Positions 1 through 20,483 are shown, numbered from the whole stretch's first letter. The stretch: DNA of 63,332 nucleotides, filler included, from Octopus bimaculoides (GCF_001194135.2; 6 parts of 5 records of this genome joined end to end with filler, not necessarily neighbours in it); one strand, 5' to 3'. Numbers and translations are program-made. Notes: generated from the sequence alone by a model not told the origin.

Positions 1-1
1 T

Positions 2-523
2 ACCGTCATTTTACCGTTTTGTATGAGAGAATTAGATTTTCTACAGATGTTCCCTTTCCCAGCGAAAGGCTCTGACTTCCTTTTCCTACCAATTCTAATA
101 ACAACTTATATGCTGACCGTATCACTTATTTTAATGCGTTATAACGATAATATAGTCCCTGTTTTCCTTATGGAGATCGTGAAAAGAGAGTTCGATGAAC
201 TTAATGAAAGCTTTCCGAAATATATGTTCGATATAAAACATGGAAAATCTATAAATAAATGCAAAGCTAAAAGTCGTTTGATAGCCGAGATATCACAAAA
301 ACATCGAATACTTTGTAAACTGCTCGAACTGTGCAGTGATAAATTTCAACTCCAGTTAGCAACAATCATATTCTATGTCCCATGCGGTATTTTTTGTACG
401 CTATATGGAACACTGAATAAACTACTAAAGTATGATGAGATAAGTTTTATGTTATCTTTCTTGCTTGGAAGCACATGTGCAATGCTCAAGTATTTTCATG
501 AAGGCATATTACTGTATAACAAG
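2..523 (+). CDS. Gustatory receptor-like (GRL/7TMIC) gene, large exon, 5'-truncated by window edge (about TM4-TM6)
   Basis: Frame is open from base 2 (TVILPFC precedes the track's M at 23). It has three hydrophobic segments (FLFLPILITTYMLTVSLIL; FQLQLATIIFYVPCGIFCTLYGTL; ISFMLSFLLGSTCAMLKYF) and a GR-like stretch KHRILCKLLELCSDKFQLQL. It ends at a consensus donor AAG|GTAAGT (523/524), phase 0. Confidence 0.8.
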
Positions 524-840
524 GTAAGTAAACTCTTGCATATTTATCATTGTCAGCAATTCAACTTAAACCAAGATGGAGAAACGCATTCATTTCTTCG
601 TTATTGGTCCTATTAACTTCTTTTGTAGTCGGCGACGATGGTGCGTCGTACAAATTGCTTAGCTGCATTTCTTCTTCAGTTGTACATCCTAATTTGCAAT
701 CACAATCACGTCGACTTTACCTTATTCCGCTTCTTCTCTCCCTCAAAATTGCAAGTATGGGATTCAGCAACCGACAAACATCCCCTTCGCACAAATGCTG
801 TGATCCCAGTTACTCAAAGCCCATGGAACACACACACATA

Positions 841-857
841 CAAACTCTCTCTCTATC

Positions 858-893
<36 letters not shown>

Positions 894-894
894 C

Positions 895-931
<37 letters not shown>

Positions 932-932
932 C
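841..932. repeat. Compound (CT)n/(AT)n microsatellite
   Basis: Directly visible; produces the SLSLSL/IYIY ORFs. Confidence 0.95.
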
Positions 933-1239
933 AGACATAGGGTAAAATTTATAATTAATTAATAATTAATAATTTTACCAAGTAATTCGGTATGTTAAAA
1001 AACCCCCATTATCTGTAAACTTATACATTAGTTTTATAATTATAAACACATAATTATAATTAGGGTACAGCCGAAATTACTTCACCGCATACCGAAATTT
1101 AAAAATAGCAGTTAAATTCTATTCCACTACCATAATATATCTCCCAGACTACAACAAAGACGGGTGGATTCGTTATTTTTTCTCTTTGCCTATGTGAATT
1201 GCGAATGCTGTCTTAGTTTATTTATTTATTTATTTATTT

Positions 1240-2290
1240 ATTTTCTTTGTACAGACTGTCGCAGTTGCCCAGTCTGAATGGTTGTCTATTTAAATTATAG
1301 CTAGACTTTCTAGTCTCTCATGCGCTTTATTGATTTAGTTCATCGCCGCAAATAGCACACTATGTTTGAGCCTAAAAACAGGGGTTAGCTTTTCTTTTAC
1401 TCCGATCCTCGCTTTCGTTTTAGTGCAACAGCCTAATCCTTGCTAAAAAGACATTTGGAAACAATCTTTCATTTTTTGTCTCAGTTGTTTGACTTCATCC
1501 GAAATTTTAACCGTACCAACAATATTTTCACAGGGGAACACTAATGGGGGTATCCCATATCTTAAATAGGTTTAGTGATGTTTTTCAACACATACAGGAT
1601 TGTCATTTTCGTTTCACCTCGAAACATTACGTTGAAAATACATTCACTGATGAAATATAATTTCTTTCCTGTAAAAACCATACGCTACTTTATTTGATTT
1701 CAATAAATTCGTCTTACTAAATTGTCGCCTGTTTCTTCAATTATGATAGTGATGTTACTACCCGTGTCTAATTGCATTTTGATACTAATGATTTCGATTC
1801 TCACCTTGATGAATTTTCTGTTAGTTCTTAAAATTTTTTCTCAGATGACAAACTATTTATTAATTTTTTTTTTTTCGTTAGGTCCATTTTTTGTCAACTT
1901 AGTTCTTCATTGCGATTTAATGTCTCCTGTGTTCCCGCAACGAAAACATTTCGCTGTTTTGAACGGACACTCTTTTCTCAGGTGCCTACCACCACATGCC
2001 ATACATGTTTCTATCTTTTGATATATATCGTATTTTCCGTGAATCACCTTAGTATCTGCTCAGCCATCCAATTTAGTTTCGAATTTCCTACAGTTTTGTT
2101 ACAAGTTAACCTCTACTCGTTTGCAGCTTTTCTTTTAATGTTTCTGGAGCAATCTTTATCCCTTTCAGGTTAGTTTTCAGCTTATACTTGTAACGAAGCC
2201 ATGGTCTTCCTATGCTTATCCGTTCATCATGGAACTAGCTATGCATAAGAACGTTTGCAATCCTGTTGTCCATCATTTACTGCCAAGGCT
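1240..2290 (-). mobile_element. Decayed Ty3/Gypsy LTR retrotransposon gag-protease fragment in GRL intron
   Basis: Minus strand gives zinc knuckles CMACGGRHLRKECPFKTAKCFRCGNTG (~1920-2010) and retropepsin KMQLDTGSNITII (DTG at 1760-1768), followed by FRGETKMTILYVLKN and a degenerate pre-RT region with stops. Confidence 0.8.
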
Positions 2291-2338
2291 TATTAACCCA
2301 AATATAAAAAAATAGCATTATCTTATTCTTGATTTTAG

Positions 2339-2407
2339 AGCCATGGGATTCTGCAGGAAATTTACAAATCAAACATTGGTGATATTACCCCAGAGGCTAA
2401 AATGGAG
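2339..2407 (+). CDS. GRL exon 2 of 4 in window, SHGILQEIYKSNIGDITPEAKME
   Basis: Acceptor tcttattcttgattttAG|, 69 nt stop-free, donor GAG|GTAAGT; phase 0 to phase 0. Confidence 0.8.
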
Positions 2408-2444
2408 GTAAGTAACTACTACGGTATTAGCATGAAGGAAAAGC

Positions 2445-2620
2445 GGTGAGCTGTCAGAGTGGTTAGCACGCCAGGCGAAATGCTTAGCGGTATTTCGTCT
2501 GCTGTTACGTTCTAAGTTCAAATTCCACCGAGGTCGACTTTGCCTTTCATCCTTTCGGAGTCGATAAATTAAGTACCAGTTACGTACTGGGTCGATCCAA
2601 TCGACTGGTCCCCCCCCCCT
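2445..2620 (+). mobile_element. tRNA-derived SINE, family A
   Basis: gagctg(g/t)cagagtggttagcacgcc...aaattcc(a/g)ccgaggtcgactttgcctttcatcctttcgg...gataaattaagtaccagt. Recurs at ~3195, 15260, 19300-19812, 25725, 47820, 49690, 49940, 51200. Confidence 0.85.
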
Positions 2621-2706
2621 AGGTTATGCGAAGTAATACTACGAAAAGTTAGAAATAATACATTTCTAAATCTCTCAGAGAAATTTAAGTAGTAGTGATA
2701 CGATGA

Positions 2707-2929
2707 AGTAGTTGTATGCTGTCAACTTAATGTGACAGTCCCCTGAAGGGAATAATACAACTTTTGGTTACACCTAGGAAGCTGTACCGCTTCCTGTCGG
2801 CTATGATACTTAAGGACACAGGAAATGTGTCAAGGCCGACAGAAAGCGGTACAGCTTCCTAGGTCTAACCAACAGTAGTATTATTCCCTTCAGGGGACTG
2901 TCACATTAATTTGACAGCATACAACTACT
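2707..2929. mobile_element. Foldback/MITE-like element with ~95 bp inverted arms
   Basis: Arm 2707-2801 is the near-exact reverse complement of 2835-2929; 33 nt spacer. Confidence 0.85.
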
Positions 2930-3194
2930 ACTACGAAAATGTTCTACGAATTAAATATGATATAAATACATAGTCATCGTAAAGAAACGGCTCTTTTGTT
3001 ACGAAGCACATCAGCAATTATTATATCCCCATTTTAGTCTGCGGAAAAATAATAAGTATCAGTATGCAGATCATTGCCTTGATTTTCGACGGTGACTGTG
3101 CATATCCTGGTTTATTATTGATCGGTACATATCTGCAAGGATCAGCGAACTGCAATGTACATACATTTCTTTGATATTATTTCCGATAGCAGAA

Positions 3195-3410
3195 GGCGGC
3201 GAGCTGGCAGAGTGGTTAGCACGCCGAGCGAAATGCTTAGCGCTATTACACCTGCATTGACGTTCTGAGCTTAAATTCCGCCGAGGTCAACTTTGCCTTT
3301 CATCTTTTCGGGATCGATAAATTAAGTACCAGTTGCGTACTGGGATCGATCTAATCGACTGGCTCCACTCCCCCAAAATTTCGGGCCTTGTGCCTAGAGT
3401 AGAAAAGATT
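3195..3410 (+). mobile_element. tRNA-derived SINE family A, near full length
   Basis: Head, core and tail similar to the other copies. Confidence 0.85.
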
Positions 3411-3448
3411 ATTTCCGATAACAGATATTCTAACGATTGTCTTCTTTA

Positions 3449-3496
3449 ATGTCATATAAGATGCAAGAAACGATGTCATATAAGATGCAAGAAACG
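3449..3496. repeat. 24 bp perfect tandem duplication
   Basis: atgtcatataagatgcaagaaacg x2. Confidence 0.95.
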
Positions 3497-3658
3497 ATAT
3501 CGAACCAATATCGTAACATTTTATGCACTAAAACCGTTTTACTCCTATATATGCGCTACAAAAATTGGGTTGCGTCTGATATGCGCGGGTGTGTGCCATC
3601 AAACACGGTAATCTTATATTCTCTATAGACTTAATTTTTATTTATCGTTTTCTTCCAG

Positions 3659-3748
3659 TTGACATTTTTCATTAATCGCCTTTCTAACGCTCGAATCGGA
3701 TTATGCATTGGAAAATTTTTCCTCGTAAACCATTCATCTGTTCTCGGC
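3659..3748 (+). CDS. GRL exon 3, LTFFINRLSNARIGLCIGKFFLVNHSSVLG (IL3/TM7a)
   Basis: Acceptor tttatcgttttcttccAG|, 90 nt stop-free, donor GGC|GTATGT; phase 0-0. Matches the GR pattern l..f..rl......t..G.F.i....l. Confidence 0.85.
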
Positions 3749-3865
3749 GTATGTATACGAGTTATTTCTGATTTTTCCTAACTTTAAACGTTATATATTC
3801 ATTGATAATTTTTGTGATATTTATCTCTTTGCAACACAGTAATGCTAGAGATTACAAGTTCTTTA

Positions 3866-3905
3866 ATTATGAAATAAACTCCTGATCAGGAGTTTATTTC
3901 ATAAT
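3866..3905. repeat. Perfect 40 bp palindrome, no spacer
   Basis: attatgaaataaactcctga|tcaggagtttatttcataat. Confidence 0.95.
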
Positions 3906-4720
3906 CTATTTGACACTGTTGCCGAAACGCTGAGTTACGCGGACCTAAACAAAGCAACACCGGTTATCAAGCACTGGGNNNNNNNNNNNNNNNNNNNNNN
4001 NNNNNNNNNNNNNNNNNNNNNNNNNNNNNNNNNNNNNNNNNNNNNNNNNNNNNNNNNNNNNNNNNNNNNNNNNNNNNNNNNNNNNNNNNNNNNNNNNNNN
4101 NNNNNNNNNNNNNNNNNNNNNNNNNNNNNNNNNNNNNNNNNNNNNNNNNNNNNNNNNNNNNNNNNNNNNNNNNNNNNNNNNNNNNNNNNNNNNNNNNNNN
4201 NNNNNNNNNNNNNNNNNNNNNNNNNNNNNNNNNNNNNNNNNNNNNNNNNNNNNNNNNNNNNNNNNNNNNNNNNNNNNNNNNNNNNNNNNNNNNNNNNNNN
4301 NNNNNNNNNNNNNNNNNNNNNNNNNNNNNNNNNNNNNNNNNNNNNNNNNNNNNNNNNNNNNNNNNNNNNNNNNNNNNNNNNNNNNNNNNNNNNNNNNNNN
4401 NNNNNNNNNNNNNNNNNNNNNNNNNNNNNNNNNNNNNNNNNNNNNNNNNNNNNNNNNNNNNNNNNNNNNNNNNNNNNNNNNNNNNNNNNNNNNNNTGTCT
4501 TACATCTTTATGGGGTCAATAAATTAAATACCAGTCATGTACTGCGGTTGAGGTAATCAATAGCTCCAGCCCCACCCCCACCCCCACCGAAATTGCTGGT
4601 CTTGTGACAAGATTGGAAGCCGTCATTATTATTTTTTTTTTCATCACAAATTAACGTTTTTGTTTTTCTTGCTCTATCTTTATTCAGCAGCTGAATATAT
4701 TTTCCTAAATTTTATTTCAG

Positions 4721-4867
4721 ATCTTTGGCACTGTGGTGTCATATGCGATTTTGGCCTACCAAACGTCGAGCACCTATTCTTCTACTATTCAGCGTAAACA
4801 CGCAGCCTCGGCGCTAAATTTCACAATGAAGTTTCTAAATAGAACACTACACAAACGATTCTTCTAA
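4721..4867 (+). CDS. GRL terminal exon, IFGTVVSYAILAYQTSSTYSSTIQRKHAASALNFTMKFLNRTLHKRFF*
   Basis: Acceptor aattttatttcAG|, phase 0. TM7 motif I.G.v.(S/T)Y-x5-Q. Stop TAA at 4865-4867. Confidence 0.85.
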   Translation: MFGTVVSYAILAYQTSSTYSSTIQRKHAASALNFTMKFLNRTLHKRFF

Positions 4868-5234
4868 ACGCCTTACTGAATCTTGAAAGACAATGGAGTC
4901 GTATTTGACTTTTAGAATACGTTTGTTTTTTAAAATATTTCTTTGAATTGGGTTTTGTAATTACACCAGTCAATGAATTTATGTTGTCGTATCCTATATA
5001 AACTATGGTAACTCCGTAAATTGACAAAACGACGAATAACCTTAATCGATTTTTGCTTAGATTCTGATCAAAGGTTTCTACTTCAATTTCACCAATTCCA
5101 ATGAAGCAGACAACCAATTTATTTAGAATGCTGAACATTTACAATAGTTACAGTAAACGGGAGTTGCTAATTTGCATACCGTACGCGATAACATTTTATT
5201 TTTTTAATTTCAGGGGTCCTTCAACGGAGATCTC

Positions 5235-5590
5235 AGTACGCATCAAGTTATGATATGCTGTGAGCATCATCTATATGATGTGGAAAATATTCCATCAACA
5301 ATGCCCAAATGATATAGGTATCATCTTTAAAATTCATTTGAGGCTTGGCCCTCGTGCCATCCGCCCACTACAGAAATCACGTTCGTGTTGCATCACAACA
5401 CTACGACAGAACTATTTCACCTCAACTGGCCCTGCTCTCTTCAATATCGTGCCAGCCCATATAAAGGAGGAAAGTGATTTCACGGCATTCAAATGGTCTC
5501 TATATGTTCACCTCCAACAAATACTAGACAAACTAACCACACCCGGATATGTCTCTGAAAACAATAACTCACTGTGCCCAATAAACCTTT
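5235..5590 (+). mobile_element. CR1/L2-group LINE ORF2 3' remnant
   Basis: IIYMMWKIFHQQCPNDIGI...RLGPR...NYFTSTGPALFNIVP...FKWSL...TPGYVSENNNSL resembles the C-terminus of CR1-group RT proteins. Confidence 0.75.
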
Positions 5591-5990
5591 TGTTTAATGT
5601 GCACAGATCCGACGTCAGGCACAAGAACAGTTGTTCGACAGAACTTGCTGAACATTTCGTTTCAAGCGGTTGCAATTTTGAAGAAGACTTGAAAGTGCAT
5701 ATTCTCAGAAAATATTCTGAATCTGCTTCACTTTCTCTTCTCAGAATGTATGAGGAGAAATATGTTTGTGGGTTATTAACATCACGCCCTGGAGGAATGA
5801 ATAAAATGACAGGAGAATATCATCAAATTTATACAAAACTGTTTGATTAAGTATTCTTCTTTCTCTCTTTTTCATTCCTTTTTTTTCTGTCGTCTTTTTT
5901 TTCTGTCTTTTTCTTTTCGCCTGTTATGAAATTGTAACTTAAAAACTGATGATGTCATTCTATCAACGTGTGGACGCTGGTTGCTCTCCT
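5590..5990 (+). mobile_element. Penelope-like element, C-terminal GIY-YIG endonuclease remnant and tail
   Basis: FNVHRSDVRHKNSCSTELAEHF...DLKVHIL...EEKYVCGLLTSRPGGMN; downstream ctgatga motif at ~5946. Confidence 0.75.
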
Positions 5991-6169
5991 TCATAATTTA
6001 CGTTTAAATTTCTGTAATTTTAAATTTTCATCACTTCTTATTTTGAACTTGACAAAGACAGGCGTATTGTTGAAATAGCGTTCAACGAATAAAATATCTT
6101 ACAACCGAATCGTGCTCTTCGACTTGACTGTCTACCTTTGTGAAGAGTTACGTCAATCCTTTTAAAAAA

Positions 6170-6239
<70 letters not shown>

Positions 6240-6276
6240 ATTATTATTATCATTATTATTATTATTATTATTATTG
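6170..6276. repeat. (ATT)n microsatellite
   Basis: Directly visible; produces the poly-I ORF. Confidence 0.95.
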
Positions 6277-7131
6277 CCTTTGCACAGCTTCTAACGCTGG
6301 AGAATTAATCTTAAAAGTGGATAAGCCAAAAATATCCAAAGAACCAGCATTTTGAAACGAGTCTTACAAATCNNNNNNNNNNNNNNNNNNNNNNNNNNNN
6401 NNNNNNNNNNNNNNNNNNNNNNNNNNNNNNNNNNNNNNNNNNNNNNNNNNNNNNNNNNNNNNNNNNNNNNNNNNNNNNNNNNNNNNNNNNNNNNNNNNNN
6501 NNNNNNNNNNNNNNNNNNNNNNNNNNNNNNNNNNNNNNNNNNNNNNNNNNNNNNNNNNNNNNNNNNNNNNNNNNNNNNNNNNNNNNNNNNNNNNNNNNNN
6601 NNNNNNNNNNNNNNNNNNNNNNNNNNNNNNNNNNNNNNNNCCGTAACTTAGCGATTCGCCAAAAGAGACTGATAGAATAAGTACTAGGCTTACAAAAAAT
6701 AAGTCCTGGGGTCGATTTGCTCGACTAAAGGCCGCAGTCAAATGACTGAAACAACTAAAAAAAATAAATAATAAAGAATTAATTCAGATAAACTTATTCA
6801 GAATTACGTCCCTTACATCGTAGTTCACGTTATTGATGGTTTCTTTTTTTCAAATGCAGTCTATTTCGGAGTTTTCTCCCTTAGACTTCTTACTACTTTT
6901 AAACGAAAAGGATTTTGGACGCGTTCAGAAAGTATCGGAGAATACATCTATGTTGATATTAAGAGTTATTTATACAAACAGGCATGCATAGAGACATGCA
7001 TGGATACACAGACTGATAGATAAACAAACAGATCGATCGATTGACAGACAGACAGACGGACGGACTGACGGATGGATGGATGGATAAATAGACGGATGGA
7101 TGGATGGATGTGTGGATGGATAGAAAGTAGG

Positions 7132-7173
<42 letters not shown>

Positions 7174-7838
7174 GAGAGAGTGAGAGAGATGTATAGATAG
7201 ATGGAGAGTGAGCGATGTAGAAAATCATACATACATAGATCGTTAGCAAGGAGGGACACACATATAAGAAAAAAGAAAGCAAAGGACCACTGATGAGGTC
7301 ACAGAAGTGTGACGAAAGAACTCTGGCCAAAATACAGTTAATGTAATATAAAGCTGAAGCAATTTAACACCAAATATATAGTGCGTGTGTTTTTATTGGC
7401 TAAACTGGCAACATGACCATCCCCAAATACAACAATATATATATATATATNNNNNNNNNNNNNNNNNNNNNNNNNNNNNNNNNNNNNNNNNNNNNNNNNN
7501 NNNNNNNNNNNNNNNNNNNNNNNNNNNNNNNNNNNNNNNNNNNNNNNNNNNNNNNNNNNNNNNNNNNNNNNNNNNNNNNNNNNNNNNNNNNNNNNNNNNN
7601 NNNNNNNNNNNNNNNNNNNNNNNNNNNNNNNNNNNNNNNNNNNNNNNNNNNNNNNNNNNNNNNNNNNNNNNNNNNNNNNNNNNNNNNNNNNNNNNNNNNN
7701 NNNNNNNNNNNNNNNNNNNNNNNNNNNNNNNNNNNNNNNNNNNNNNNNNNNNNNNNNNNNNNNNNNNNNNNNNNNNNNNNNNNNNNNNNNNNNNNNNNNN
7801 NNNNNNNNNNNNNNNNNNNNNNNNNNNNNNNNNNNNNN

Positions 7839-7884
<46 letters not shown>

Positions 7885-8489
7885 TGGGAGAGGAAGAGAG
7901 AGAGAGAGAGAGAGAGATAGATAGAGAGAGAGATTAATAATCGCATTCAATAGAATGTAGGCACGTTAGTACGTAGGACGCCAGAAATGGCTAGTTTAAA
8001 TAACATACGGTTCACAGTGAGGTAAAACATCTATGAGGGTATTATGTGATACTATACACATAAGCACCAGCTCTAATCTAAACTGTACATCCGGTATCTC
8101 TTACTGTTCAGTCATTGCTGGGGTCAGCAGAGATAAATGTCATTTTATATACACAGGACTTAAATGTGAGATAGTGTTATTGTGAAAATAAGCATAAATG
8201 AAATCCCTTGTTTTCATAAGCAAACTTTCAGACTCAAATATACAGGATCGCAAGTCTTTGAAAAGAAAAAGAAAAAGAAAGAAAAGAAAAAAGAAAAAAG
8301 AATGTGAGAACAAGCAGGTCTTTAAAAAAGAGAGGAAGATAAATAAAGATTGGAGATGAGAAAAGAAATTTTTTAAAATTAAGAGTTGCCTCCCTTTGAC
8401 CGGTTCGTATTAGAATGCGGTTGCTTTAAATTAATTTAACGGGGAGAAGATCAAAGTTTGTGGTGAGACTGCATGCTTAATTCCGAGAG

Positions 8490-9660
8490 AGTGATGTTTT
8501 CCAGTTCGGCAAAAGAAACTCGTCCAGATACTTACATTTCATAAAAATGTAAGATTTTTGTCTTAGATCTAAACAGTAATGCGTAATCTTTCAGCTTCTC
8601 TGAACGATTAATGCATTGCTGATCGATTAAAGTGTAGTGTGGGTCCTTTCCTCGGTGCATTACTTGAAGTTGTGTGGTGTGTAATTGACCTTGAGGTCCG
8701 AGGTATGGCTAGCAAACTTTGTTACTTTCTTTTTATTCATGTGTCAGGAAGAAGACTTCTGGTTCGCACATCTTTTTTAACATCAATTTCGCATACACCA
8801 ATGTGCATTTTCTTTCGAGTTGAATTATTTTCGAGCACTGAGATGACTTTAGCTTCACAGACAACCGAACTAATTATGCATGCCTGGTCGAGTGGACACG
8901 CTTCTGGATCTCGACAGTTGCAGCTTAGAGTGAGCTCCTAGTGTGACTTGCAGGTAGGGGTGATAATATTTTTCAAGTTGGAATAGAAGGTGTGTGAAAC
9001 TTACACTGAACATCTGTTAAAAATGTTCTTGTATCTATGCTTATCTTAGAAATGTTTATTATATTAAAGCTAGGAATTTTCTCCCTACGTTAATCTTAAT
9101 GTTCAGGAAAAGTGGGAAGGACTATGTAATCTTACAGGGTCCATTTTTAGGTTTTGTATTTTTAATTACAGGATTGCAAGTTTTCTTTTCTTCTTTGAAG
9201 CCGCTGTTAGCCAGAGCAATATTATAGTAGAGATTCCTTAACGAGAGATTACACATCCTATTTCTGATATTAGTTTCAAGATTTTTTTAACGCTATAGTT
9301 GGGGGTGACAAGACTGATTACGTGCATACGTAAAGTTTTCATTAGGTTTACGATAGGGCTTCAAAGAGCATAATCTTAGGTATAGAGAAGCATCTAAGAA
9401 ATTGACTGTAGGGACGATGGTGGTTACAATGATTTTGAGGCTTAACTGACTAAAAGTATACATGAGATTTTTCCCTGAATTCATTCAGAACGTGCATCAC
9501 AAACGTGAGATACGGCGAACCCATCGTCACGGTAAACGAATTTCATGGGACGAAACTTGAATCTCAATGTGTCTAATATACTGGGAACGTGTCTGCTTGT
9601 TTCATGCTCTTGCTTGATGATACTGCGGTTCTATTATGTCGCAAGTATTTTCACTGTAAT
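8490..9660 (-). mobile_element. Decayed Penelope-like retroelement (RT + GIY-YIG)
   Basis: Minus strand: RT motif FVYRDDG (~9520-9540); VNFLDASL...KPYRKPN...SCHP (9293-9430); CNCRDPEACPLDQACIISSVVCEAKV...HIGVCE (8780-8935); terminal MKCKYLDEFLLPNWK. Multiple stops and frameshifts. Confidence 0.85.
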
Positions 9661-10079
9661 TTGATACCATCTTTACATTACACAATTCATCGTTTCAGAT
9701 TTCAGATTTCGGCGGAATTTAAACCCAGAACGTAAAAGAGATGGAAGGAATGCTGCTAAGCAACATTTTGTCCGACGCCCAAAAGATTCTTCTGACCCGT
9801 CTCCCTACGACATCTTTATAATAATTCTTTTTACTATAAGCACAATGCCTGAAATTTCCGATGTGGGTGTTTATTTACATTACAGTATTCAACTGACACT
9901 TTATTTTCTCAATCCCGAAACGATCAAAGGTAAAGTTAACCTCAGCGGAATTTAAACTGGTCAAAATGCCGCTAAACATTTTGTCCAGCACATTAATGGT
10001 CTTACCGCCTTGCCACTATAATAATAACGATTTGTAGCATGAACACAATACCTCAAATTTAGGTGAGGGATCTACTGAA

Positions 10080-10250
10080 CTATATCGAGCCTATGAGATA
10101 GTGAGTTCGATCCCTGGACGGGGCTGTGTTGTGTTCTTGAACAAGACACTTTAATTCCTGTTGCTCCACATCACACAGCTGTAGAAATGAGTTGCGACGT
10201 CACAGGTACCAAGCTGTATCGACCCCTTTACCTTTCCCTTGGATAACATC
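10080..10250 (+). mobile_element. tRNA-derived SINE, family C
   Basis: B-box gagttcgatccc, then gtgttcttgaacaagacactt...gagttgcgacgtcacagg...cccttggataacatc. An opposite-strand copy lies at 38370-38620. Confidence 0.7.
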
Positions 10251-10492
10251 AGTGTGTTTTGCTCAAGAACACGGCGCACCGCCAGTTCTAGGAATCGAAC
10301 CACGATCTCACAGTCATAAGGGCAAGCATTAGGCCATGTGCCTTCACATGTTTTCGTAGAGCGTAGAGGATTTGGGAGTAGAAAAGTAATTCTTGTAAAC
10401 AGAACGAAAACGTGACTAAACATGCATTAATAAAGAAACCTTCTTCATTTATAATAACATCTATGCCTCTTTTAAAGTATATATGAGATGTG

Positions 10493-10603
10493 TTATGTAA
10501 TCGAAAACACCGATCTCTTGTCTATATCATAAGTGCTTTGTTGTTTATCATCTGGATATAACGTTAAACCATCATCATTCACAGTTTTCATTGTCAGTTT
10601 AGG
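10493..10603 (-). CDS. Candidate terminal exon of unknown gene, PKLTMKTVNDDGLTLYPDDKQQSTYDIDKRSVFSIT*
   Basis: Acceptor gtacttttgttttttAG|, 36 stop-free codons, non-repetitive; no homology recognised. Confidence 0.25.
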   Translation of the reverse strand, partial: PKLTMKTVNDDGLTLYPDDKQQSTYDIDKRSVFSIT

Positions 10604-11308
10604 CTAAAAAACAAAAGTACAGAAACAGAATAAAGGAATAAAACTGTTGCATTAATATTTCATTCTGTCATTTGGTGGTTACTGCTTTAATAAAAAAGAA
10701 ATAATAATAGTAATAATAAGTAGTCTTATGGTTAACAACATAGTTCAAGATACACGTTTAACAACGGAAGGCAATATAGGCGAAATATACAATCTAGGCT
10801 ATTTGTTACGATAAGACAATGATCTAAAGAAGAAAAGAAAAGCTTGTTTATCTCTGAAAGAAATTACTTGATAGCTTTTGTGCTTCTGGTTTGAAGGTTG
10901 TTTTTGTTGTTGCCGTTTACGTTTTGTTTTGTTTTTTGCTTTATCTTTTTTATTTTGCGTTTTTTTTTGCTTTTTTTTGCTTTTTTGTTTCCTTCTTGTT
11001 CATATCTGATGTTTGGACCGGTGGTTTATAATATATGACAGAAAAATATAAAAATATGAAGAACCGCACACAACCACTCCCTCACACACATGCACAAGTC
11101 CAAACTTATATGCAAACACACACAAAACACACACACAGACACACACACACACACACATATATAAGAATACAAGTACATCCTTTAGTATAATAGCAAAACG
11201 ACGAATGGATATATACGTGTATGTATGTATGTATGTATGTACGTATTTATGTATGTATGTATGTATTTATGTATGTATTTATGCATGTATGTATGTGTGT
11301 ATTTATGC

Positions 11309-11345
<37 letters not shown>

Positions 11346-12459
11346 CGCATGCGTATGCATGCTTATATGTATATACGTTAGTCTGTGTGTGTGTGTTTGT
11401 GTATACGTATGACGTTTATGTTTGTGTGTGTGTTTGTGTGTGTGTGTAAGTGTTAGTAATGTTGATGTTATCTTGAAGGTCGTACTTGTATTCTTACAAA
11501 ACAATATCAAAGAGAAAAAAGGACTTTACAAGTAGGCAACGCTTTATAAACAGAACATGCAGCAGAACCTGTCTATGTGATCTGGAGAGAACTTACCTTT
11601 GAGCATTTACATTTTAAACATTTCAGAAAAAAAAAAAAGCTATTATCTTACTTTCTTTGACAACAACATTGCGAACCGATCGAAAGTTGTTTAGAAATTC
11701 TAAGGGGACCGTTTACCAGAAATAACATAAAAAAGGTCAAGTCGAATGTGTAAAGTACCTTTTCATTTAATTGCTGTGTGGTAGATTTACTTATTTTCGC
11801 TTCGTAGTTGTGCAGTGATGAATCTCGCTTGCGACTATGAGGTTTTGAGTTCTGGTTCACGGCACGGCAATTTGGACAATTGTATTGTAGTGTAGTCTAG
11901 GACCGACCAATGCCTTGTAAATGAATTTCATTGATGGAAAATGAAGAAGCCCTTCGTATATGTATGTATCTGTGTGTGTATGTATATGTGTGTATGTGCG
12001 TGTGTGTGGGTGGGTGGTTGTGAAGGAGCAAAAACTCCCGAAATAGGGCATATACGCTCATTGCCCAGTTTTATATATACGCAGGAATGTTATATGGTAA
12101 GAATCTTGCTTTCCAATCACATAGTTCAGGGGTCAGGGTTTTTGGCATTCCGAGCTCTAGGAAGAACATATTAAATAAACACTGTTCTACTTTCCCCCCT
12201 CTTAAACATGAACAGCACTGAACTAGACTTCTCGTTATCACTTCAAAAACTTGGTGAAAATTTCACCGAGGTGTTCTTTTAGTGAGTGTACATCTTCGTA
12301 GGAAAATCTGTGACTTGAAGCATATCCTTCCTCTACGAGCACAGGAAATATTTAGTCTTCCAAAAACTAATACCATTCTAGAAAACTAAAAGGAAATTTA
12401 AAGTCGAATGCTGCACTCACAACCGGGACTGCAAAGCTGCGATACATAAAAACGTTGAG

Positions 12460-12800
12460 CTGTCTTAAGGTATGGGCAAACTAAGCACTTGCCAGGGGCC
12501 TCACGTGTCTAAGGGCTCAGTTCTGATCTATGTATACTATGGATTACTATCGTTAGACATATCATAGGGTGCAGTGTTCTAATTTGTTTAGGGGCCTCAC
12601 TAATTTAAGGGCTCGATTCTGCTCTCTATATAGTTGGCTTGATATCATTAAAATATAGCGCAGGGTCCAATGTACTGAATTGCTCAGAAGCCTGACGCGT
12701 CTACGGGCTCGGTTCTGATCTAATGTATAGTGTGGCTTACTATCGTGTAAAATATTAAGGGGCCCAGTGCACTGATTAGCCTAAGGGCTTATATTAGTTC
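12460..12800. repeat. Degenerate 96 bp tandem repeat (~3.3 units), possibly within a hAT-type MITE
   Basis: aggggcctcac at 12494 and 12590, agaagcctgac at 12686, aagggctt at 12783; shared aagggctc...ttctgatct...tatcg blocks. Confidence 0.65.
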
Positions 12801-13140
12801 GTCCGTCGCTATTGACGATGACCCAGGACATCACATGGCAGACGCAAACGAGGCACGCTGTGGCCAATGTGTGCCCGGAAGGCTCTGCCGCAGGTCGGGC
12901 ACTGGTAGTCTGTTAGGACTGATGGTAAATAGTTGGCTCTGGACTTGTGCAGTTCACGTTTTTTTTTGTGCCCCTTCAATTTTGTTCTGTTCGCACGAAG
13001 TGATATTTCTGACGGTGCAGCTTCGCCAGGTAGGTTGGTATTGTACTTCTGATTCCCATGTATCGGCGTTGATCGCAAAGCTGTTCAAAGCTCTATACTG
13101 CTGCTAAGACAGCCCTGCATAGCCATGCTACAGAGACACC
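12800..13140 (-). mobile_element. RTE-clade LINE 3' remnant
   Basis: KLKGHKKKRELHKSRA...YQCPTCGRAFRAHIGH: C-terminal C2H2-like motif typical of RTE ORF ends. Confidence 0.75.
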
Positions 13141-13700
13141 ATTCAAAACTATTTCTGTCTCCATTTGATCATTCTGGATAAAATTTGATTCGCTAATGAG
13201 GACTAATAACACTGAAGTATGCCTGTTACTTTCCCTAGTTGGCTAAACACTAGACTAATGTTGTCTATATTTAATTAGACTTTTATCGTTTCTTTTTTCC
13301 TTGCTTGTTCCTTCTAGAATTTTTAATACGTATAGCGAAAAATTTTATTTATTCATTGTATGTGTAATTTCAGTTATTCGAAAATAGTATTTTTAATCAC
13401 GATGTTACATAAATGAGAACTTATATAAGAAGTATTATGAAAGCTATCCAGGGATATTTCCAATCCGTCATATTACGCGTGACTGAGACATATAGATTTC
13501 AAGTGTAGTATTGAATATTGGCACGAACAAAATAATAAATTATAAAAAAAAAAAGAACGGTTAGAAAATACATAAGGGAAATAAGTCATACAATTCGTAA
13601 GGAATCGCAGATAATAGGGAAAGCAAAAGAGGAGCTAAGTTTCAGAAAGAGAATGACGAAGTTTTCTTTGAAGAAGGATACAAGGTCTCTGGTGACATGG

Positions 13701-13753
<53 letters not shown>

Positions 13754-15974
13754 NNNNNNNNNNNNNNNNNNNNNNNNNNNNNNNNNNNNNNNNNNNNNNN
13801 NNNNNNNNNNNNNNNNNNNNNNNNNNNNNNNNNNNNNNNNNNNNNNNNNNNNNNNNNNNNNNNNNNNNNNNNNNNNNNNNNNNNNNNNNNNNNNNNNNNN
13901 NNNNNNNNNNNNNNNNNNNNNNNNNNNNNNNNNNNNNNNNNNNNNNNNNNNNNNNNNNNNNNNNNNNNNNNNNNNNNNNNNNNNNNNNNNNNNNNNNNNN
14001 NNNNNNNNNNNNNNNNNNNNNNNNNNNNNNNNNNNNNNNNNNNNNNNNNNNNNNNNNNNNNNNNNNNNNNNNNNNNNNNNNNNNNNNNNNNNNNNNNNNN
14101 NNNNNNNNNNNNNNNNNNNNNNNNNNNNNNNNNNNNNNNNNNNNNNNNNNNNNNNNNNNNNNNNNNNNNNNNNNNNNNNNNNNNNNNNNNNNNNNNNNNN
14201 NNNNNNNNNNNNNNNNNNNNNNNNNNNNNNNNNNNNNNNNNNNNNNNNNNNNNNNNNNNNNNNNNNNNNNNNNNNNNNNNNNNNNNNNNNNNNNNNNNNN
14301 NNNNNNNNNNNNNNNNNNNNNNNNNNNNNNNNNNNNNNNNNNNNNNNNNNNNNNNNNNNNNNNNNNNNNNNNNNNNNNNNNNNNNNNNNNNNATATATAT
14401 ATATATATATATATATAGATATATATATGCATATATATATATATATATTGTACACATACATACATACACACACACACACGCGCGCACACACACACATATA
14501 TATGTATATATATTCGTACGCGCGCTAGTGTCTGTGACATTGACTGTGGTTCGCACACGTACTAACGCTATATCTGGACGTATCGTTTCTCTGTATTTCC
14601 TTCATTTATCGATAAAGTATTTTCTTTATAAAGAAATTAGATATAAAGATGGTGTTAAAAGGCCTTTTATATAGCAATTGACTTAAAGAGCTATGGGAAT
14701 AAAGTATCACTTTGAAAACAAGCCACTAGAAATCTATAAATATTCTCAGTTGATTGGAGATATCCGTCTCACTACATTATATTTTTGAAACCCTAGTTTA
14801 TTTACGTTTACAGTGTAAAAACGCTTCCCTGGGCTGCTTTTAATATCTATTGTAAAAGATTTAAAATGTAAACTCCAGCATGGTCTGAGCTCAATGACTG
14901 AATTGAGTTAAAGAATATAATAAAGTGCGGATGAGTCTGTGCGATAGATAGATAGATAGATAGATAGATAGAGAGATAGATAGATATATAAATAGATAGA
15001 TAGATAGATAGATAGATTGACTAATCGAGAGAGGGAGAGAGAAAAAGAGAGTGAAGGAGAGAAAGAGATAGAGAAATAGAGAGAGCAAAGGAGAGAGAGT
15101 GAGAGATAAAGAGAAAGAGAGAGAAACTGTGTGACAATACTCTCTCTCTCACAACTTCTCTCTCATTCTCTCTGTCTCTCTATATATTTTTGATATTATA
15201 TTATATTATATTATATTATATTATATATATATATATATATATATATNNNNNNNNNNCATTATTTTCTCCCGCCTTATTCTACCGAGGTCGACTTTACCTT
15301 TCATCCTTCCGGGGTCGATAAATTAAGTACCAGTGAAATACTGAGGGTCGATGTGAATGACTAGTCCCCTCTCCCCCGCAAAAAAAACATTTCAGGCCTT
15401 GTGCCTTTAGTAGAGAGGACTATTTTCTTCCGCATTTTCAGTTCTCTGACAACTTGTATTTTCTCTCTTTCTGGATCTACCGGTCTGTCTTTACCTTTAT
15501 TCTTTCTTCCTTCCTTCCTTTCTTTCTTCCTTCCTTTCTTTTCTTTCACTCTTCTACTCCTTACATTTTTCATTTGCCAGTGAAATAAATAAACATAATT
15601 AAAAACGTAAACTTTCCAATGGTGTACTAAATTTGTCGTACTAAACATCAACTGCTCTTACATTCAACTATTTCATTTCTGTAGTTTTCATTTTGTTTTC
15701 ATTTTTCTCTTTATATATATCCACATATTTCGAACATGCTAGATAATGAGGATCAGCCCATTAAATATTATACATCACGTTTTAGACATCAAATTAAATA
15801 TCACTTTTGCGGTTATTAAGTACATGCATGTGTGGCTATATTGCGTCAATGAAAGGTTAACTTCCTAGAAATACGTAACTGTCAACGAAATACACTGATG
15901 GTTTTATTAAGTCGTTCAGATTTCTTGGCATTGATATAATTTGTAAAAGCAAGATTTATTTATCTACGCGTAGG

Positions 15975-17155
15975 CTCAAGCTCGGCTGTGTGATTAAGGA
16001 ACACTGTTTGTGATCTCGTGGATCCAAGTTCAATTCCGCGTCGCTTTACGTAAGTGTGTATTTTTTTCGTTTTTTTTTTTTTACGCTATAGCCCCGGGTC
16101 GACCAATGCCGCGTGATTGAATTTGGTTGACGGAAACCGGCGTGGCTGTGTGGTAAGAAGCTTACTTCCCAATCATGTAGTTTCGGGTTCAGTCTCACTG
16201 CGTGGCACCTTGAGCATGTGTCTTCTACTATAGCCTCGGGCTGACCAAAGCATTGTGAGTGGATTTGGTTGACGGAAACTGAAAGAAGCCTATCGTATGT
16301 GTGTGTGTGCGTGTGTGTGTTTGTGTGTTTGTGTGTGTGTGTGTGTGCGTGTGTGATTGTGTGTGTGATTCCTCCCACCACTGCTTGAGAATCGGCGTTG
16401 GCGTGTTTACTTCTCCGTAACTTAACGGTTCACCAACAGAGACCGATAGAATATGTAGGTGTTGATTCATTCAACTAAACAGCCTTCAACGGTGAAGCCC
16501 CAGCATGGCCACGGTCAGATGACTGAAACAAGCAAAAGATAAATGCAACTAGGCGTGACTGTGCGGTAAGAAACTTGCTTCCCGATCACATGGTTTCAGG
16601 TTCAGTCCCACTGCATGACAACTTTGGACAAGTATCTTCTGCCATACCACCAATGCCTTGTGAGTGGATTTGGTAGACAGAAACTGAAAAAAGCCTGTGG
16701 TATATATATTATATAATATAATAAATGCGAAAAATAAATTGTGTGTGTCAGTGTATCACACTTTGACCCACCTACTCTCTCACTATTCAATGACACTTCC
16801 TCGTGCTGGGGTGAGAGTAATAGTAGGCATAAAGATGGTGAGAGCAGTGTCTTCCATTATAGCCTCGGGCCGACCAAAGCCTTGTGAGTGGATCTGGTAG
16901 ACGGAAACTGAAAGAAGCCCGTCGTATATATATGTATATATATATATGTATGTGTGTGTATATGTTTGTGTGTCTGTGTGTGTCCCCCCCCCAACATTGC
17001 TTGACAACCGATGTTGGTGTGTTTACGTCCCCGTAACCTAGCCGATAGAATAAGTTCTAGGCTTGCAAAGAATAAGTCCTGGGGTCGATTTGCTCGACTA
17101 AAGGCGGTGCTGCAGCATGACCGCAGTCAAATGACTGAAACAAGTAAAAATAAAT
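15975..17155 (+). mobile_element. Pile of 3-4 same-orientation family-B SINE copies/fragments
   Basis: Repeated ggctgtgtggtaagaagctt...ggcaccttg(g/a)gcaagtgtcttctactatagcctcggg...gacggaaactgaaagaagcc + microsatellite + tail ggcggtgct...cagtcaaatgactgaaac at ~16140, 16550, 16835. Confidence 0.85.
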
Positions 17156-17831
17156 GTAACTATTTGTTGTTTAATCTCATCCATTTCTGTTCAAATCGAA
17201 CTATAATAAGGTAAAGATAATCCCTCATCGTTGGAGTTCAAATACAACCGAAGTCAACTTTATCTTTCATCCCTCCAGGGACCGGTGACGATAAAATAAA
17301 ATACCTGTCAGTTATTGTGTACAGTCTCAACTGACGACAAAAGATATATGGTTTTCGATTTTGTGTTCAGGTTCGATCTTCTGTCACATGTCCTCCGATA
17401 AGACCCAATGAAAGTCTACATCAAACATCAACCAATTGGACAAGTATGTGAATATCCGTACTGATATTATTAAATTGCCTGTCGTCTGGTAATATCTTTA
17501 TGATTTTATATCAATCATATGCCGTGTCAGATGGCTTTTTTAAAACCAGACAAAAAGAGATATGTCATTTTGGCGTCACACAAATATAGTCTGCAACACA
17601 GCTAAAAAAACTCCCCACAAACTCGCACTCACGCACGCATATATGTATATATAATACTAATAGCTCTGGTACATAAATACTAAATACGGATGAGTAATTA
17701 TAGCAAAAATAACACATTAAGAGGCTAGATTAATCATATAATTAGTCGAAGTTAGTTAGGTTGTAATCGAACATTTCCACTCGGTTGTCTTTTTATTTTT
17801 CCGGATGCCGGAAAAAGCATGTGGCTTTTAG

Positions 17832-17909
17832 TTTAATAAACGATAAGATTTATGGCAGTTATTTTCTATTCACGAAAGTAATGCAACTGAGTAAATTCGG
17901 CGATGATAC
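17832..17909 (+). CDS. Candidate internal exon (LINDKIYGSYFLFTKVMQLSKFGDD), acceptor uncertain
   Basis: Frame open 17767-17909; donor AC|GTATGT is phase 2, matching the 18973 exon. Confidence 0.25.
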
Positions 17910-18109
17910 GTATGTTTTAATCCGGAATGGTTATTAGCTCGAATAAAATAATTTGGTTTATGTTCTCCCAACTGGAATTTTCGTTTTCTTTTTAATTTGC
18001 TTCCGTTTATTTTGGTCTTCAACTTTTTTCATCTTATATGTTAGAAAATTTCTAACAACAAAATGCATAGCGGCATACTTGAGATGCCGACTTAGTGACT
18101 TATTCAAAT

Positions 18110-18590
18110 TGTTAAGTCGACAGGTGTCTCCATCTTAAGGCGAATTTTCGCATCTTCAGCCAAGGCATCCGTATCTCACCTTTCAGTGGTTTCTGGCAGC
18201 AGACAGAACGCTTTACAAGTGGTTTCCTTCCCTTCCACAAAAAGCGGAAAAAGATTCTCTCCAACTTGTTCAGCCACAAATCGGGGCATGGCACCACGGT
18301 CAGACGGTAGGTGATTACTGATGCTATAAACATCTGCATCTTCTCCGCCCTCCCTAGCAAGGATAACGCCCGCCAAAACCAGGCCTGGGTTAGAGCAGTC
18401 ACCTTGCTGGCTACTTCACTCCAATTTTTCTCTATCTGGAGGTCTTGACCAATCCAGACTCCGTGCAACTTAACAGGACCTTCCGTCCAACGCCCCACGA
18501 CGTTATTGGACGCCATCGGCTTGCCCCTCCAGGTGCCGAGTTGCAAACCGACCGAATTGTCCTTGTTAACCTTTGCTCTTGCCACCTGAT
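18110..18590 (-). mobile_element. Tx1/L1-clade LINE ORF2 fragment
   Basis: GVWIGQDLQIEKNWSEVASKV...W..RALSLLGRA...FIASVITYRLTVVPCP...LERIFFRFLWKGRKPLVKRS. Confidence 0.85.
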
Positions 18591-19276: not shown

Positions 19277-19299
19277 TACTTTTAGCTCCCTTTTTTTTC

Positions 19300-20438: not shown

Positions 20439-20483
<45 letters not shown>

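What the first reader, a model, noticed from the sequence alone, without database searches (positions are those of the whole stretch)
2..4867. Spliced gustatory-receptor-like (GRL/7TM ion channel) gene in probable octopus DNA
Seen: four exons with canonical GT-AG sites splice in frame, all at phase 0, into ...FHEGILLYNK|SHGILQEIYKSNIGDITPEAKME|LTFFINRLSNARIGLCIGKFFLVNHSSVLG|IFGTVVSYAILAYQT...*. The ORF track shows only a read-through of the first exon. Established: insect GRs/ORs and non-insect GRLs share three phase-0 introns near the C-terminus (after TM6, in IL3, inside TM7) and a TM7 TYhhhhhQF motif; they are tetrameric ligand-gated channels with inverted topology. Inference: this is a cephalopod GRL. 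Octopus chemosensation is mostly discussed in terms of nAChR-derived chemotactile receptors, ionotropic receptors and GPCRs, so an intact GRL would point to another, little-studied chemosensory channel class. The N-terminal part (about TM1-3) lies upstream of the window.
Basis: partly seen in the sequence, partly recalled or inferred. Interest (0 to 1): 0.88.

Follow-up and report, generated by a model that had tools for sequence, protein, structure and literature searches.

The report
Octopus gustatory-receptor-like channel gene, 3' part

Summary
Confirmed. Exons 2-523, 2339-2407, 3659-3748 and 4721-4867 have GT-AG borders, are all phase 0 and give 275 aa plus a stop. RNA contigs from several public runs show all three junctions, so the N gap at 3979-4495 is purely intronic.

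The peptide meets Pfam 7tm_7. Of 47 aligned sequences (the peptide and 46 relatives), 45 match 7tm_7. An AlphaFold model (pLDDT 85) matches only insect GR/OR/Orco structures. Introns 1 and 3 sit at the same column and phase as introns of a tardigrade GR.

It is O. bimaculoides LOC128248504. RefSeq already uses the same junctions, and UniRef names the O. vulgaris orthologue "Gustatory receptor".

- The window starts directly after a 2,935-N gap that hides about 125 N-terminal codons.
- The large exon is one copy of a tandem array: at least 2 copies in O. bimaculoides, 2 in O. sinensis and 4 intact in O. vulgaris. The array sits upstream of a single set of the three small exons, as at Drosophila Gr39a.
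- Only the window's copy was seen spliced in RNA.
- The shared exons are strongly constrained (dN/dS 0.04). The large exon is nearly unconstrained (0.55-0.78).

Intactness and chemosensory function remain unproven. Interest is moderate to low.

The parts
1..523 (+). 3' 522 nt of the large 5' exon (frame from base 2). It encodes the end of TM3, TM4, TM5 and TM6 (aa 1-174 of the 275-aa peptide). It is cut at its 5' end by a 2,935-N assembly gap. It is the most proximal copy of a tandemly duplicated exon.
   Evidence: The frame is open to the window edge and the donor is AAG|gtaagt. GRL profile E = 1.4e-33. RNA contigs match exactly across 1-523: X35 1-304, X15 31-361, X14 92-523. The upstream gap is shown. 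A duplicate 5.75 kb upstream is 96.2% identical.
524..2338 (+). Intron 1 (phase 0). Its first ~90 nt are as conserved between octopus species as the exon. It contains (CT)n/(AT)n microsatellites.
   Evidence: GT..AG borders. Junction 523/2339 is seen in RNA contigs of X14, X17, X26, X35 and X45. Conservation profile.
2339..2407 (+). Exon 2, 69 nt: SHGILQEIYKSNIGDITPEAKME (end of the TM6 cytoplasmic extension and start of helix S7a).
   Evidence: It is 100% identical at protein level in O. sinensis and O. vulgaris.
2408..3658 (+). Intron 2 (phase 0). It carries two SINE-like repeats (2440-2591, 3193-3344) and a 103-nt-arm inverted repeat (2707-2929).
   Evidence: Junction 2407/3659 in RNA contigs. 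Repeats.
3659..3748 (+). Exon 3, 90 nt: LTFFINRLSNARIGLCIGKFFLVNHSSVLG (helix S7a and the hairpin before the pore helix).
   Evidence: One amino-acid difference from O. sinensis.
3749..4720 (+). Intron 3 (phase 0), including the assembly gap 3979-4495.
   Evidence: RNA contigs join 3748 to 4721 with GT..AG ends in X43, X27 and X14.
4721..4867 (+). Coding part of exon 4. It encodes pore helix TM7b with the motif SYAILAYQT, then a 27-aa tail with two N-glycosylation sequons (NFT, NRT) and the stop TAA at 4865-4867.
   Evidence: E = 1.8e-11. Sequons.
4868..5337 (+). 3' untranslated region, at least to 5337.
   Evidence: The 779-nt X14 contig runs e2-e3-4721..5337 without a break. X43 contigs cover 4721-5212.
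5214..5312 (+). Alternative terminal coding segment. It is entered from exon 3 (3748->5214, AG at 5212-5213) or from exon 2, and it replaces TM7 by GSFNGDLSTHQVMICCEHHLYDVENIPSTMPK*.
   Evidence: Joint 3748->5214 with GT..AG ends in X43 and X27. An exon-2 end lies directly before 5212/5214 in X27.

Best explanation
Window 1-5337 is the 3' two-thirds of Octopus bimaculoides gene LOC128248504 (chromosome CM046608.1). It is a member of the gustatory-receptor-like (GRL, Pfam 7tm_7, '7TM ion channel') family.

Shown:
- The product has the GR/OR fold: TM4 to TM6 with long cytoplasmic extensions, helix S7a, a hairpin, and pore helix S7b.
- It carries a variant of the family's TM7 motif.
- The exons that encode S7a to S7b are under strong purifying selection.

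Shown in sister species:
- The full protein is about 399 aa.
- The locus is a complex one. Several near-identical large 5' exons, each starting with its own ATG and encoding TM1-6, stand in tandem upstream of one shared set of the three small exons. This is the layout of Drosophila Gr39a.

Inferred:
- The protein assembles, as solved insect GRs and ORs do, into a tetrameric ligand-gated cation channel. The N terminus would be inside and the glycosylated C terminus outside.
- TM1-6 would form the ligand pocket and the shared TM7b would line the pore.
- The fast-evolving, duplicating large exon would be the ligand-tuning part and the shared small exons the constant channel part.
- A chemosensory role is the most likely one. 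It is not shown: the tissue of expression is unknown here.
For: Structure of the gene:
- Exon anatomy and frame.
- Identical RefSeq model P0001.
- All three junctions are present in RNA contigs of independent runs.

Family:
- Pfam 7tm_7, E = 4.3e-6, 26.7 bits against a cut-off of 26.6, on profile positions 202-361 of 370. The clan-mates 7tm_6 and Trehalose_recp also hit.
- An exhaustive HMMER search gave 46 relatives at E <= 0.001. Those looked up include the O. sinensis/O. vulgaris orthologues, octopus paralogues, and GRLs of Lottia, Haliotis, oysters, scallop, Capitella and tardigrades.
- Of 47 aligned sequences (the peptide and 46 relatives), 45 hit 7tm_7.
- The AlphaFold2 model built with that alignment has pLDDT 84.9 and pTM 0.76.
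- The top 14 Foldseek PDB hits are all Gr64a, Gr43a, BmGr9, Orco, AgamOR28, MhOR5 or ApOR5, with probability 1.0 and TMq 0.43-0.63. The next hits have E > 0.2.
- Y235 and Q241 of the TM7 motif are invariant or nearly invariant in the alignment.
- Octopus introns 1 and 3 fall in the same alignment column and phase as two introns of the Hypsibius GR gene P0027. The family is characterised by three phase-0 3' introns and the motif TYhhhhhQF (PMC9998090; PMC7746228).

Selection:
- dN/dS for e2+e3+TM7 between O. bimaculoides and O. sinensis is 0.04, from 7 synonymous and 1 non-synonymous change.

Locus layout:
- O. vulgaris has 4 intact 298-codon exons plus one set of e2-e4.
- O. bimaculoides has a second copy 5.75 kb upstream at 96.2% nt identity.

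Topology:
- Two conserved N-glycosylation sequons lie in the C-terminal tail.
Against: - The N-terminal ~125 codons of the window's exon are unread (2,935-N gap), so an intact ORF is not shown for this copy.
- The O. sinensis proximal copy has lost the start codon and 83 codons.
- The large exon's dN/dS between species is 0.55-0.78, which is not distinguishable from neutrality on 163 codons.
- Contig depths are low (2-10). There are aberrant-looking isoforms: exon-3 skipping and TM7-less forms.
- The pore-motif phenylalanine is replaced by threonine.
- No distal-copy transcript was found, so alternative use of the large exons is not shown.
- The Pfam score is only just at threshold. This is expected for a fragment.
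Confidence: 0.85

Rival explanations
1. This is a transcribed but decaying copy. The window's large exon would be a partial or relaxed tandem duplicate that still carries a good donor site, so it is spliced onto the shared exons without making a working receptor. Any function of the locus would come from another large exon upstream.
For: - The O. sinensis proximal copy lacks 614 bp, including the ATG and codons 1-83.
- dN/dS of the large exon is 0.55-0.78 between species. Between the two O. bimaculoides copies there are 12 non-synonymous and 4 synonymous differences.
- Among the O. vulgaris copies dN/dS is about 0.5-2.
- Depth is low and splicing is noisy.
Against: - In O. vulgaris the proximal copy is an intact 298-codon ORF with an ATG.
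- In O. bimaculoides the window's copy is the only one found in RNA. It matches exactly, and a transcript contig reaches 80 nt upstream of the window.
- There is no stop or frameshift in the 174 codons that can be read.
- The O. sinensis assembly also shows homopolymer indels in its distal copy. These may be assembly errors, since O. vulgaris reads through them, so its 5' deletion might be one too.
Confidence: 0.15
2. This is a genuine GRL channel subunit with a job other than external chemoreception. Possible roles are developmental signalling, internal nutrient sensing, or light or temperature sensing, as reported for some family members.
For: - Non-insect GRLs have no demonstrated chemosensory role. 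PMC5850775 cites Saina et al. 2015 for a role of a cnidarian GRL in body patterning rather than external chemosensation.
- GR28b(D) is thermosensory (PMC11526382).
- The three deep 2026 RNA runs sampled show almost no reads on the exons, so expression is restricted.
- Octopus chemotactile sensing is already explained by the CR family.
Against: Nothing here speaks against it. The fast-evolving, duplicating ligand-side exon is the pattern typical of environmental chemoreceptors.
Confidence: 0.3
3. This is a chance alignment of open frames and splice-like dinucleotides, or a gene-prediction artefact across an assembly gap.
For: The gap at 3979-4495 lies inside the model. The ORF list alone shows only the first exon.
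Against: - Spliced RNA contigs exist for all junctions in several runs.
- Each exon hits the family profile in the right order.
- The same exons, with the same borders, are present in two other species.
Confidence: 0.01

Closest known systems
Lophotrochozoan gustatory-receptor-like (GRL) genes. PMC7746228 cites Robertson 2015 and Saina 2015 for the family in Mollusca and Annelida. The relatives found here are from Lottia, Crassostrea and Capitella, and UniRef names some of them 'Gustatory receptor'.
   Same: These are the nearest sequence relatives outside octopus (20-27% identity, E down to 1e-10). They share the Pfam family, a length of about 400 aa, the TM7 Y...Q motif, and a C-terminal tail with NxS/T sequons.
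   Different: The octopus proteins form their own clade. The ending of their TM7 motif is QT instead of QF. None of these proteins has a known ligand or function.
Drosophila Gr39a (also Gr28b, Gr23a) complex loci
   Same: Several large 5' exons encoding most of the receptor stand upstream of three small conserved 3' exons that encode the C-terminal part with TM7 (PMC2204066). The octopus locus has the same layout: 4 large exons in O. vulgaris and at least 2 in O. bimaculoides, followed by exons of 69, 90 and 147 nt. In both, the duplicated large exons are less constrained than the shared ones.
   Different: The octopus large exons are very young or homogenised (93-98% aa identity, dS 0.01-0.04), so the isoforms would be nearly identical. 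Alternative use is shown by RNA only for one exon. The arrangement almost certainly arose independently.
Solved insect GR/OR channels: BmGr9, Drosophila Gr43a and Gr64a, Orco, MhOR5, AgamOR28
   Same: The predicted fold of TM4-TM7 matches, including the S7a helix, the hairpin and the S7b pore helix. Family-level homology is supported by Pfam.
   Different: Sequence identity is only 13-20%. The gate-motif phenylalanine is replaced by threonine. Tetramer formation, ligand and ion selectivity are untested. TM1-3 of this copy are unread.
Octopus chemotactile receptors (CRs, nAChR-derived)
   Same: They come from the same animal and are also candidate contact chemoreceptors encoded by expanded, fast-evolving genes (PMC11526382).
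   Different: The fold is unrelated: pentameric Cys-loop against a tetrameric 7TM channel. CRs have shown ligands, structures and sucker expression. The GRL has none of these.

Membership tests
Gustatory receptor / GRL family (Pfam 7tm_7, PF08395; 7TMIC superfamily) | Significant match to the family profile | tested here: met
   7tm_7 gives E = 4.3e-6 and 26.7 bits against a gathering score of 26.6, on profile positions 202-361 of 370. This is from a fragment lacking TM1-3. Of 47 aligned sequences, 45 match 7tm_7, the best at 4.4e-32.
Gustatory receptor / GRL family (Pfam 7tm_7, PF08395; 7TMIC superfamily) | TM7 motif TYhhhhhQF (PMC9998090) | tested here: met
   The sequence is S234-Y235-AILAY-Q241-T242. 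Y is invariant and Q nearly invariant across the aligned GRLs. T to S is conservative. F to T is a departure shared by all octopus GRLs and by an Argopecten GRL. Accepted family members also carry variant motifs.
Gustatory receptor / GRL family (Pfam 7tm_7, PF08395; 7TMIC superfamily) | [quoted passage not shown] | tested here: met
   Three phase-0 introns lie after aa 174, 197 and 227. Introns 1 and 3 fall in the same alignment columns (476, 531) and phase as introns of the tardigrade GR P0027. The middle one is absent there.
Gustatory receptor / GRL family (Pfam 7tm_7, PF08395; 7TMIC superfamily) | GR/OR fold (long TM4-6 extensions, split TM7) | tested here: met
   The model has pLDDT 84.9. 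The top 14 Foldseek PDB hits are exclusively insect GR, OR and Orco chains with probability 1.0.
Gustatory receptor / GRL family (Pfam 7tm_7, PF08395; 7TMIC superfamily) | Seven TM helices with the N terminus inside and the C terminus outside | tested here: inconclusive
   Only TM4-7 are in the window. TM1-3 lie in the 2,935-N gap. The O. vulgaris orthologue has the extra ~125 aa, in which I read three hydrophobic stretches by eye. Two conserved NxT sequons in the C tail fit an extracellular C terminus.
Gustatory receptor / GRL family (Pfam 7tm_7, PF08395; 7TMIC superfamily) | Forms a tetrameric ligand-gated cation channel | not testable with these tools
   This needs expression, electrophysiology or a solved structure.
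Alternatively spliced GR complex locus (Gr39a / Gr28b type) | Several large 5' exons in tandem upstream of one set of small shared 3' exons | tested here: met
   O. vulgaris L003 has four intact 298-codon exons at 4881, 10001, 16097 and 23095, then e2, e3 and e4 once. O. bimaculoides L001 has copies at 4146-4636 and at window 1-523. O. sinensis has two copies.
Alternatively spliced GR complex locus (Gr39a / Gr28b type) | Each large exon is spliced in turn to the shared exons (RNA evidence) | tested here: inconclusive
   Only the window's proximal exon was found joined to exon 2. No distal-type contig appeared at 92% likeness in four RNA runs.

The most novel reading that the evidence does not exclude
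The octopus locus would be a working cephalopod counterpart of Drosophila Gr39a/Gr28b. It would be an array of alternative, promoter-bearing large exons that evolve and duplicate quickly, giving a set of ligand-tuning halves. Each would be spliced to one strongly conserved pore module whose gate is polar (QT instead of QF). The products would be expressed in sucker, lip or olfactory sensory cells as a second ionotropic chemoreceptor class beside the CRs.
Probability: 0.25. Interest if true: 0.6.

Novelty: new member of a known kind. Interest (0 to 1): 0.38.

Why it matters
No lophotrochozoan GRL has a known ligand, cell type or function. In the library I could search, I found no paper that treats cephalopod GRLs. 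Octopus chemosensation is discussed in terms of CRs, IRs and GPCRs.

This locus gives a concrete, RNA-supported gene to test. It also shows an arrangement so far described for insect GR loci: tandem large exons sharing three small exons, with a conserved pore half and a fast-evolving ligand half.

The existence of the gene is not itself news. It is in RefSeq, and the family was expected in molluscs.

Tried and rejected
- Single-sequence AlphaFold gave pLDDT 44.7 and was unusable.
- A sequence search of PDB chains found nothing relevant.
- The word-indexed homologue search found only the gene itself and, with a profile, six proteins. The exhaustive HMMER search was needed.
- One read-laying run was lost because 5900-6300 holds a simple repeat that resembles human DNA.
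- The sequence in the gap could not be recovered. Contigs that run over the window's start are counted, but their letters are not shown.
- A first dN/dS run for exon 4 used a wrong O. sinensis segment. It was corrected.
- I checked for a tandem paralogue downstream in the window. The profile scan found none in 5000-20483.
- I asked whether the first 90 nt of intron 1 are unusually conserved. They are about as conserved as the exon, so this is not a strong anomaly.
- Other ORFs of 60 aa or more in the window have no Pfam hit. There are no tRNA or Rfam hits.
- Robertson 2003, Saina 2015 and van Giesen 2020 are not held in the library.
- The tissue of the RNA runs cannot be read because run names are coded.

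Full report
**What is in the sequence**

Exon 1 runs from the window's first bases to 523 (frame from base 2) and ends AAG|gtaagt. Exons 2 (2339-2407), 3 (3659-3748) and 4 (4721-4867) each follow a pyrimidine-rich tract and AG. The first two are followed by gtaagt and gtatgt. All four lengths are multiples of three, so all three introns are phase 0. The joined frame gives 275 residues and a TAA stop at 4865-4867. A profile HMM built from relatives hits each of the four exons separately and in order. The profile positions are 197-371, 353-377, 374-407 and 404-452, with E = 1.4e-33, 2.4e-4, 3.6e-10 and 1.8e-11. It hits nothing else in the 20.5-kb piece.

**The assembly gap and RNA evidence**

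The N run at 3979-4495 lies inside intron 3. Contigs from RNA runs join 3748 directly to 4721 with GT..AG ends in X43, X27 and X14. The X14 contig is 779 nt and runs exon 2, exon 3, exon 4 and the 3' UTR to 5337. X44 shows the last 14 nt of exon 3 immediately before 4721.

Junction 523/2339 appears in contigs of X14, X17, X26, X35 and X45. Each matches exon 1 without a mismatch. Junction 2407/3659 appears in X26, X14, X43 and X27. The frame is therefore continuous across the gap in mature mRNA, and no coding exon is hidden in it for the main transcript.

**Which gene and organism**

The peptide is 100% identical to the 231-aa RefSeq protein 'uncharacterized protein LOC128248504 [Octopus bimaculoides]'. 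That protein starts at the Met at window 134 and uses the same three junctions. The gene lies on CM046608.1 of assembly GCA_001194135.2.

**Family**

- Pfam 7tm_7 matches at E = 4.3e-6, with 26.7 bits against a gathering score of 26.6. The match is on profile positions 202-361 of 370. The clan-mates 7tm_6 and Trehalose_recp come next.
- An exhaustive HMMER scan of 1.84 billion representatives gave 46 hits at E <= 0.001.
- Look-ups of 20 of them show several groups:
  - the O. sinensis orthologue LOC118764609 (86% identity) and, in its cluster, a 399-aa O. vulgaris protein that UniRef names 'Gustatory receptor';
  - octopus paralogues at about 25% identity (O. sinensis LOC118764606 and LOC118764607, O. 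bimaculoides A0A0L8FL56) and O. bimaculoides LOC106880487;
  - GRLs of Lottia, Haliotis, Littorina, oysters, scallop, Solemya, Capitella and tardigrades.
- Of the 47 aligned sequences, 45 match 7tm_7.
- With this alignment AlphaFold2 gives pLDDT 84.9 and pTM 0.76. The model has long helices at 28-80, 86-138 and 144-184, a short helix at 192-207, a small hairpin, and a last helix at 222-255.
- Foldseek against the PDB returns, as its top 14 hits, only Gr64a, Gr43a, BmGr9, Orco, AgamOR28, MhOR5 and the ApOR5-Orco complex. These have probability 1.0 and TM-score 0.43-0.63 on the query. All further hits have E > 0.2.
- The TM7 motif reads SYAILAYQT. The Y is invariant and the Q nearly invariant in the alignment. 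All octopus GRLs end the motif in QT rather than the canonical QF.
- I tested intron homology directly by reconstructing the exon structure of a tardigrade GR gene (P0027, locus L004). Two of its phase-0 introns fall in exactly the same alignment columns as octopus introns 1 and 3. The middle octopus intron has no counterpart there.

- About 5.75 kb upstream of the window's exon 1, O. bimaculoides has a second copy of the same exon. It is 96.2% identical over 580 nt, and the similarity continues into the intron. Its start (MKMTRNIWISLGI...) is visible before another N gap.
- O. sinensis has the same pair. Its proximal copy lacks 614 bp, including the start codon and codons 1-83. Its distal copy carries homopolymer indels in that assembly.
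- The gapless O. vulgaris assembly shows the full picture. Four tandem copies of a 298-codon exon each begin with ATG, have no stops and end in AAG|GTAAGT. They start at L003 4881, 10001, 16097 and 23095. A single set of the 69-, 90- and 147-nt exons follows at 29129, 30753 and 32184.
- The window's exon 1 is the most proximal member of this array. The window peptide aligns to residues 126-396 of the ~399-aa O. vulgaris products at 81-83% identity. About 125 residues, which I read as TM1-3, are therefore missing.

**Is the window's copy used?**

- In the RNA runs examined, the contigs over exon 1 match the window copy exactly.
- Lowering the threshold to 92% brought in no contig with the distal copy's 16 diagnostic differences.
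- One RNA contig (X35, 384 nt) covers window 1-304 and runs 80 nt further upstream into the gap.

The proximal exon is thus the expressed one in these samples. Alternative use of the other large exon(s) is not shown. I could not lay reads on the upstream locus.

**Selection**

- Between O. bimaculoides and O. sinensis, exons 2 and 3 plus the TM7 part of exon 4 (74 codons) differ by 7 synonymous and 1 non-synonymous change. This gives dN/dS of 0.04.
- The 27-codon tail after TM7 is very variable (dN/dS about 2.5 on few sites). It keeps two N-glycosylation sequons, which fits an extracellular C terminus.
- The large exon has dN/dS of 0.55-0.78 between species.
- The two O. bimaculoides copies differ by 12 non-synonymous and 4 synonymous changes.
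- The O. vulgaris copies show values of about 0.5-2 at dS of 0.01-0.04, apart from the nearly identical pair A-B (0.13).

The channel-forming C-terminal module is clearly functional. The ligand-side exon is either under relaxed constraint or diversifying, and these data cannot separate the two.

**Mechanism**

Shown: a transcribed, correctly spliced GRL gene with a GR/OR-type fold and a conserved TM7 module.

Inferred from the solved insect channels: four subunits form a cation channel, TM7b lines the pore, and TM1-6 form the ligand pocket. The Q and the following residue of the motif lie in that helix. The F to T change in all octopus GRLs may alter gating. This point rests on my own knowledge of the BmGr9 and Gr43a structures and was not tested here.

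The chemosensory role is the likeliest reading but is not shown. Run names are coded, so the tissue is unknown. The deep 2026 RNA runs sampled have almost no reads on the exons.

**Rivals**

- The window's exon may be a decaying partial duplicate that is still spliced. I give this about 0.15.
- The protein may have a non-chemosensory role.
- A chance or artefact explanation is excluded by the RNA junctions and by conservation in three species.

**Novelty**

GRLs in molluscs are established (PMC7746228, citing Robertson 2015 and Saina 2015). This gene is in RefSeq with the same structure, and its orthologue is auto-named 'Gustatory receptor'. In the held library I found no paper that analyses cephalopod GRLs. 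The Gr39a-like exon array in octopus appears not to have been remarked on. I rate this a new member of a known kind, with moderate to low interest.

Noticed in passing
window 3748->5214, 2407->4721, 2407->5214: Minor splice forms appear at low depth. Exon 3 joins an acceptor at 5214 (GT..AG) in X43 and X27, which replaces the TM7 exon by a 32-aa tail and a stop. Exon 3 is skipped in frame (minus 30 aa) in a 294-nt X35 contig. Exon 2 joins 5214 directly in X27. These may be noise from a weakly expressed gene or regulated TM7-less forms.
   Followed up: partly
window 2440-2591 and 3193-3344: Two copies (86% alike) of a short interspersed repeat lie in intron 2. Their start looks tRNA-like by eye. 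RNA-run word depth on them reaches about 2e5, so the element is abundant in transcripts genome-wide. ARAGORN and Rfam call nothing there.
   Followed up: partly
window 2707-2809 / 2827-2929: A near-perfect inverted repeat (103-nt arms, 92% complementary, 17-nt loop) lies in intron 2 and looks like a MITE. Reads of two RNA runs begin or end at 2687, just beside it.
   Followed up: no
window 524-612: The first ~90 nt of intron 1 are as conserved between O. bimaculoides, O. sinensis and O. vulgaris (0.88-0.98) as the exon before them. Identity then falls to 0.4-0.7. The stretch follows every copy of the large exon and may be a splicing control element.
   Followed up: partly
window 4784-4864 (C-terminal tail): The 27 codons after TM7 differ greatly between species, with about 18 non-synonymous against 2.5 synonymous changes. 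They keep two N-x-T sequons (N260, N267). Similar sequons end most lophotrochozoan GRLs in the alignment.
   Followed up: partly
L002 2778-3670 and 9407-9433 (O. sinensis): The distal large exon has one-base homopolymer indels that break its frame. The proximal one has a 614-bp deletion bordered by a short direct repeat (ATTACCAATTACCAGCTG). O. vulgaris has neither defect, so some of these may be assembly errors.
   Followed up: partly
window 5260-5850 (+), 18112-18585 (-): These are the longest other ORFs (196 and 157 aa). Neither has a Pfam match. The first lies in the 3' UTR or downstream region and has high RNA depth, as repeats do. Both are probably remnants of mobile elements.
   Followed up: partly
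window 3979-4495, 6373-6640, 7451-7838, 13754-14392, 15247-15256: There are five N gaps in 20 kb. Those at 7451-7838 and 13754-14392 are bordered by microsatellites in the ORF translations. The assembly breaks at simple repeats, so local gene models here are fragile.
   Followed up: no
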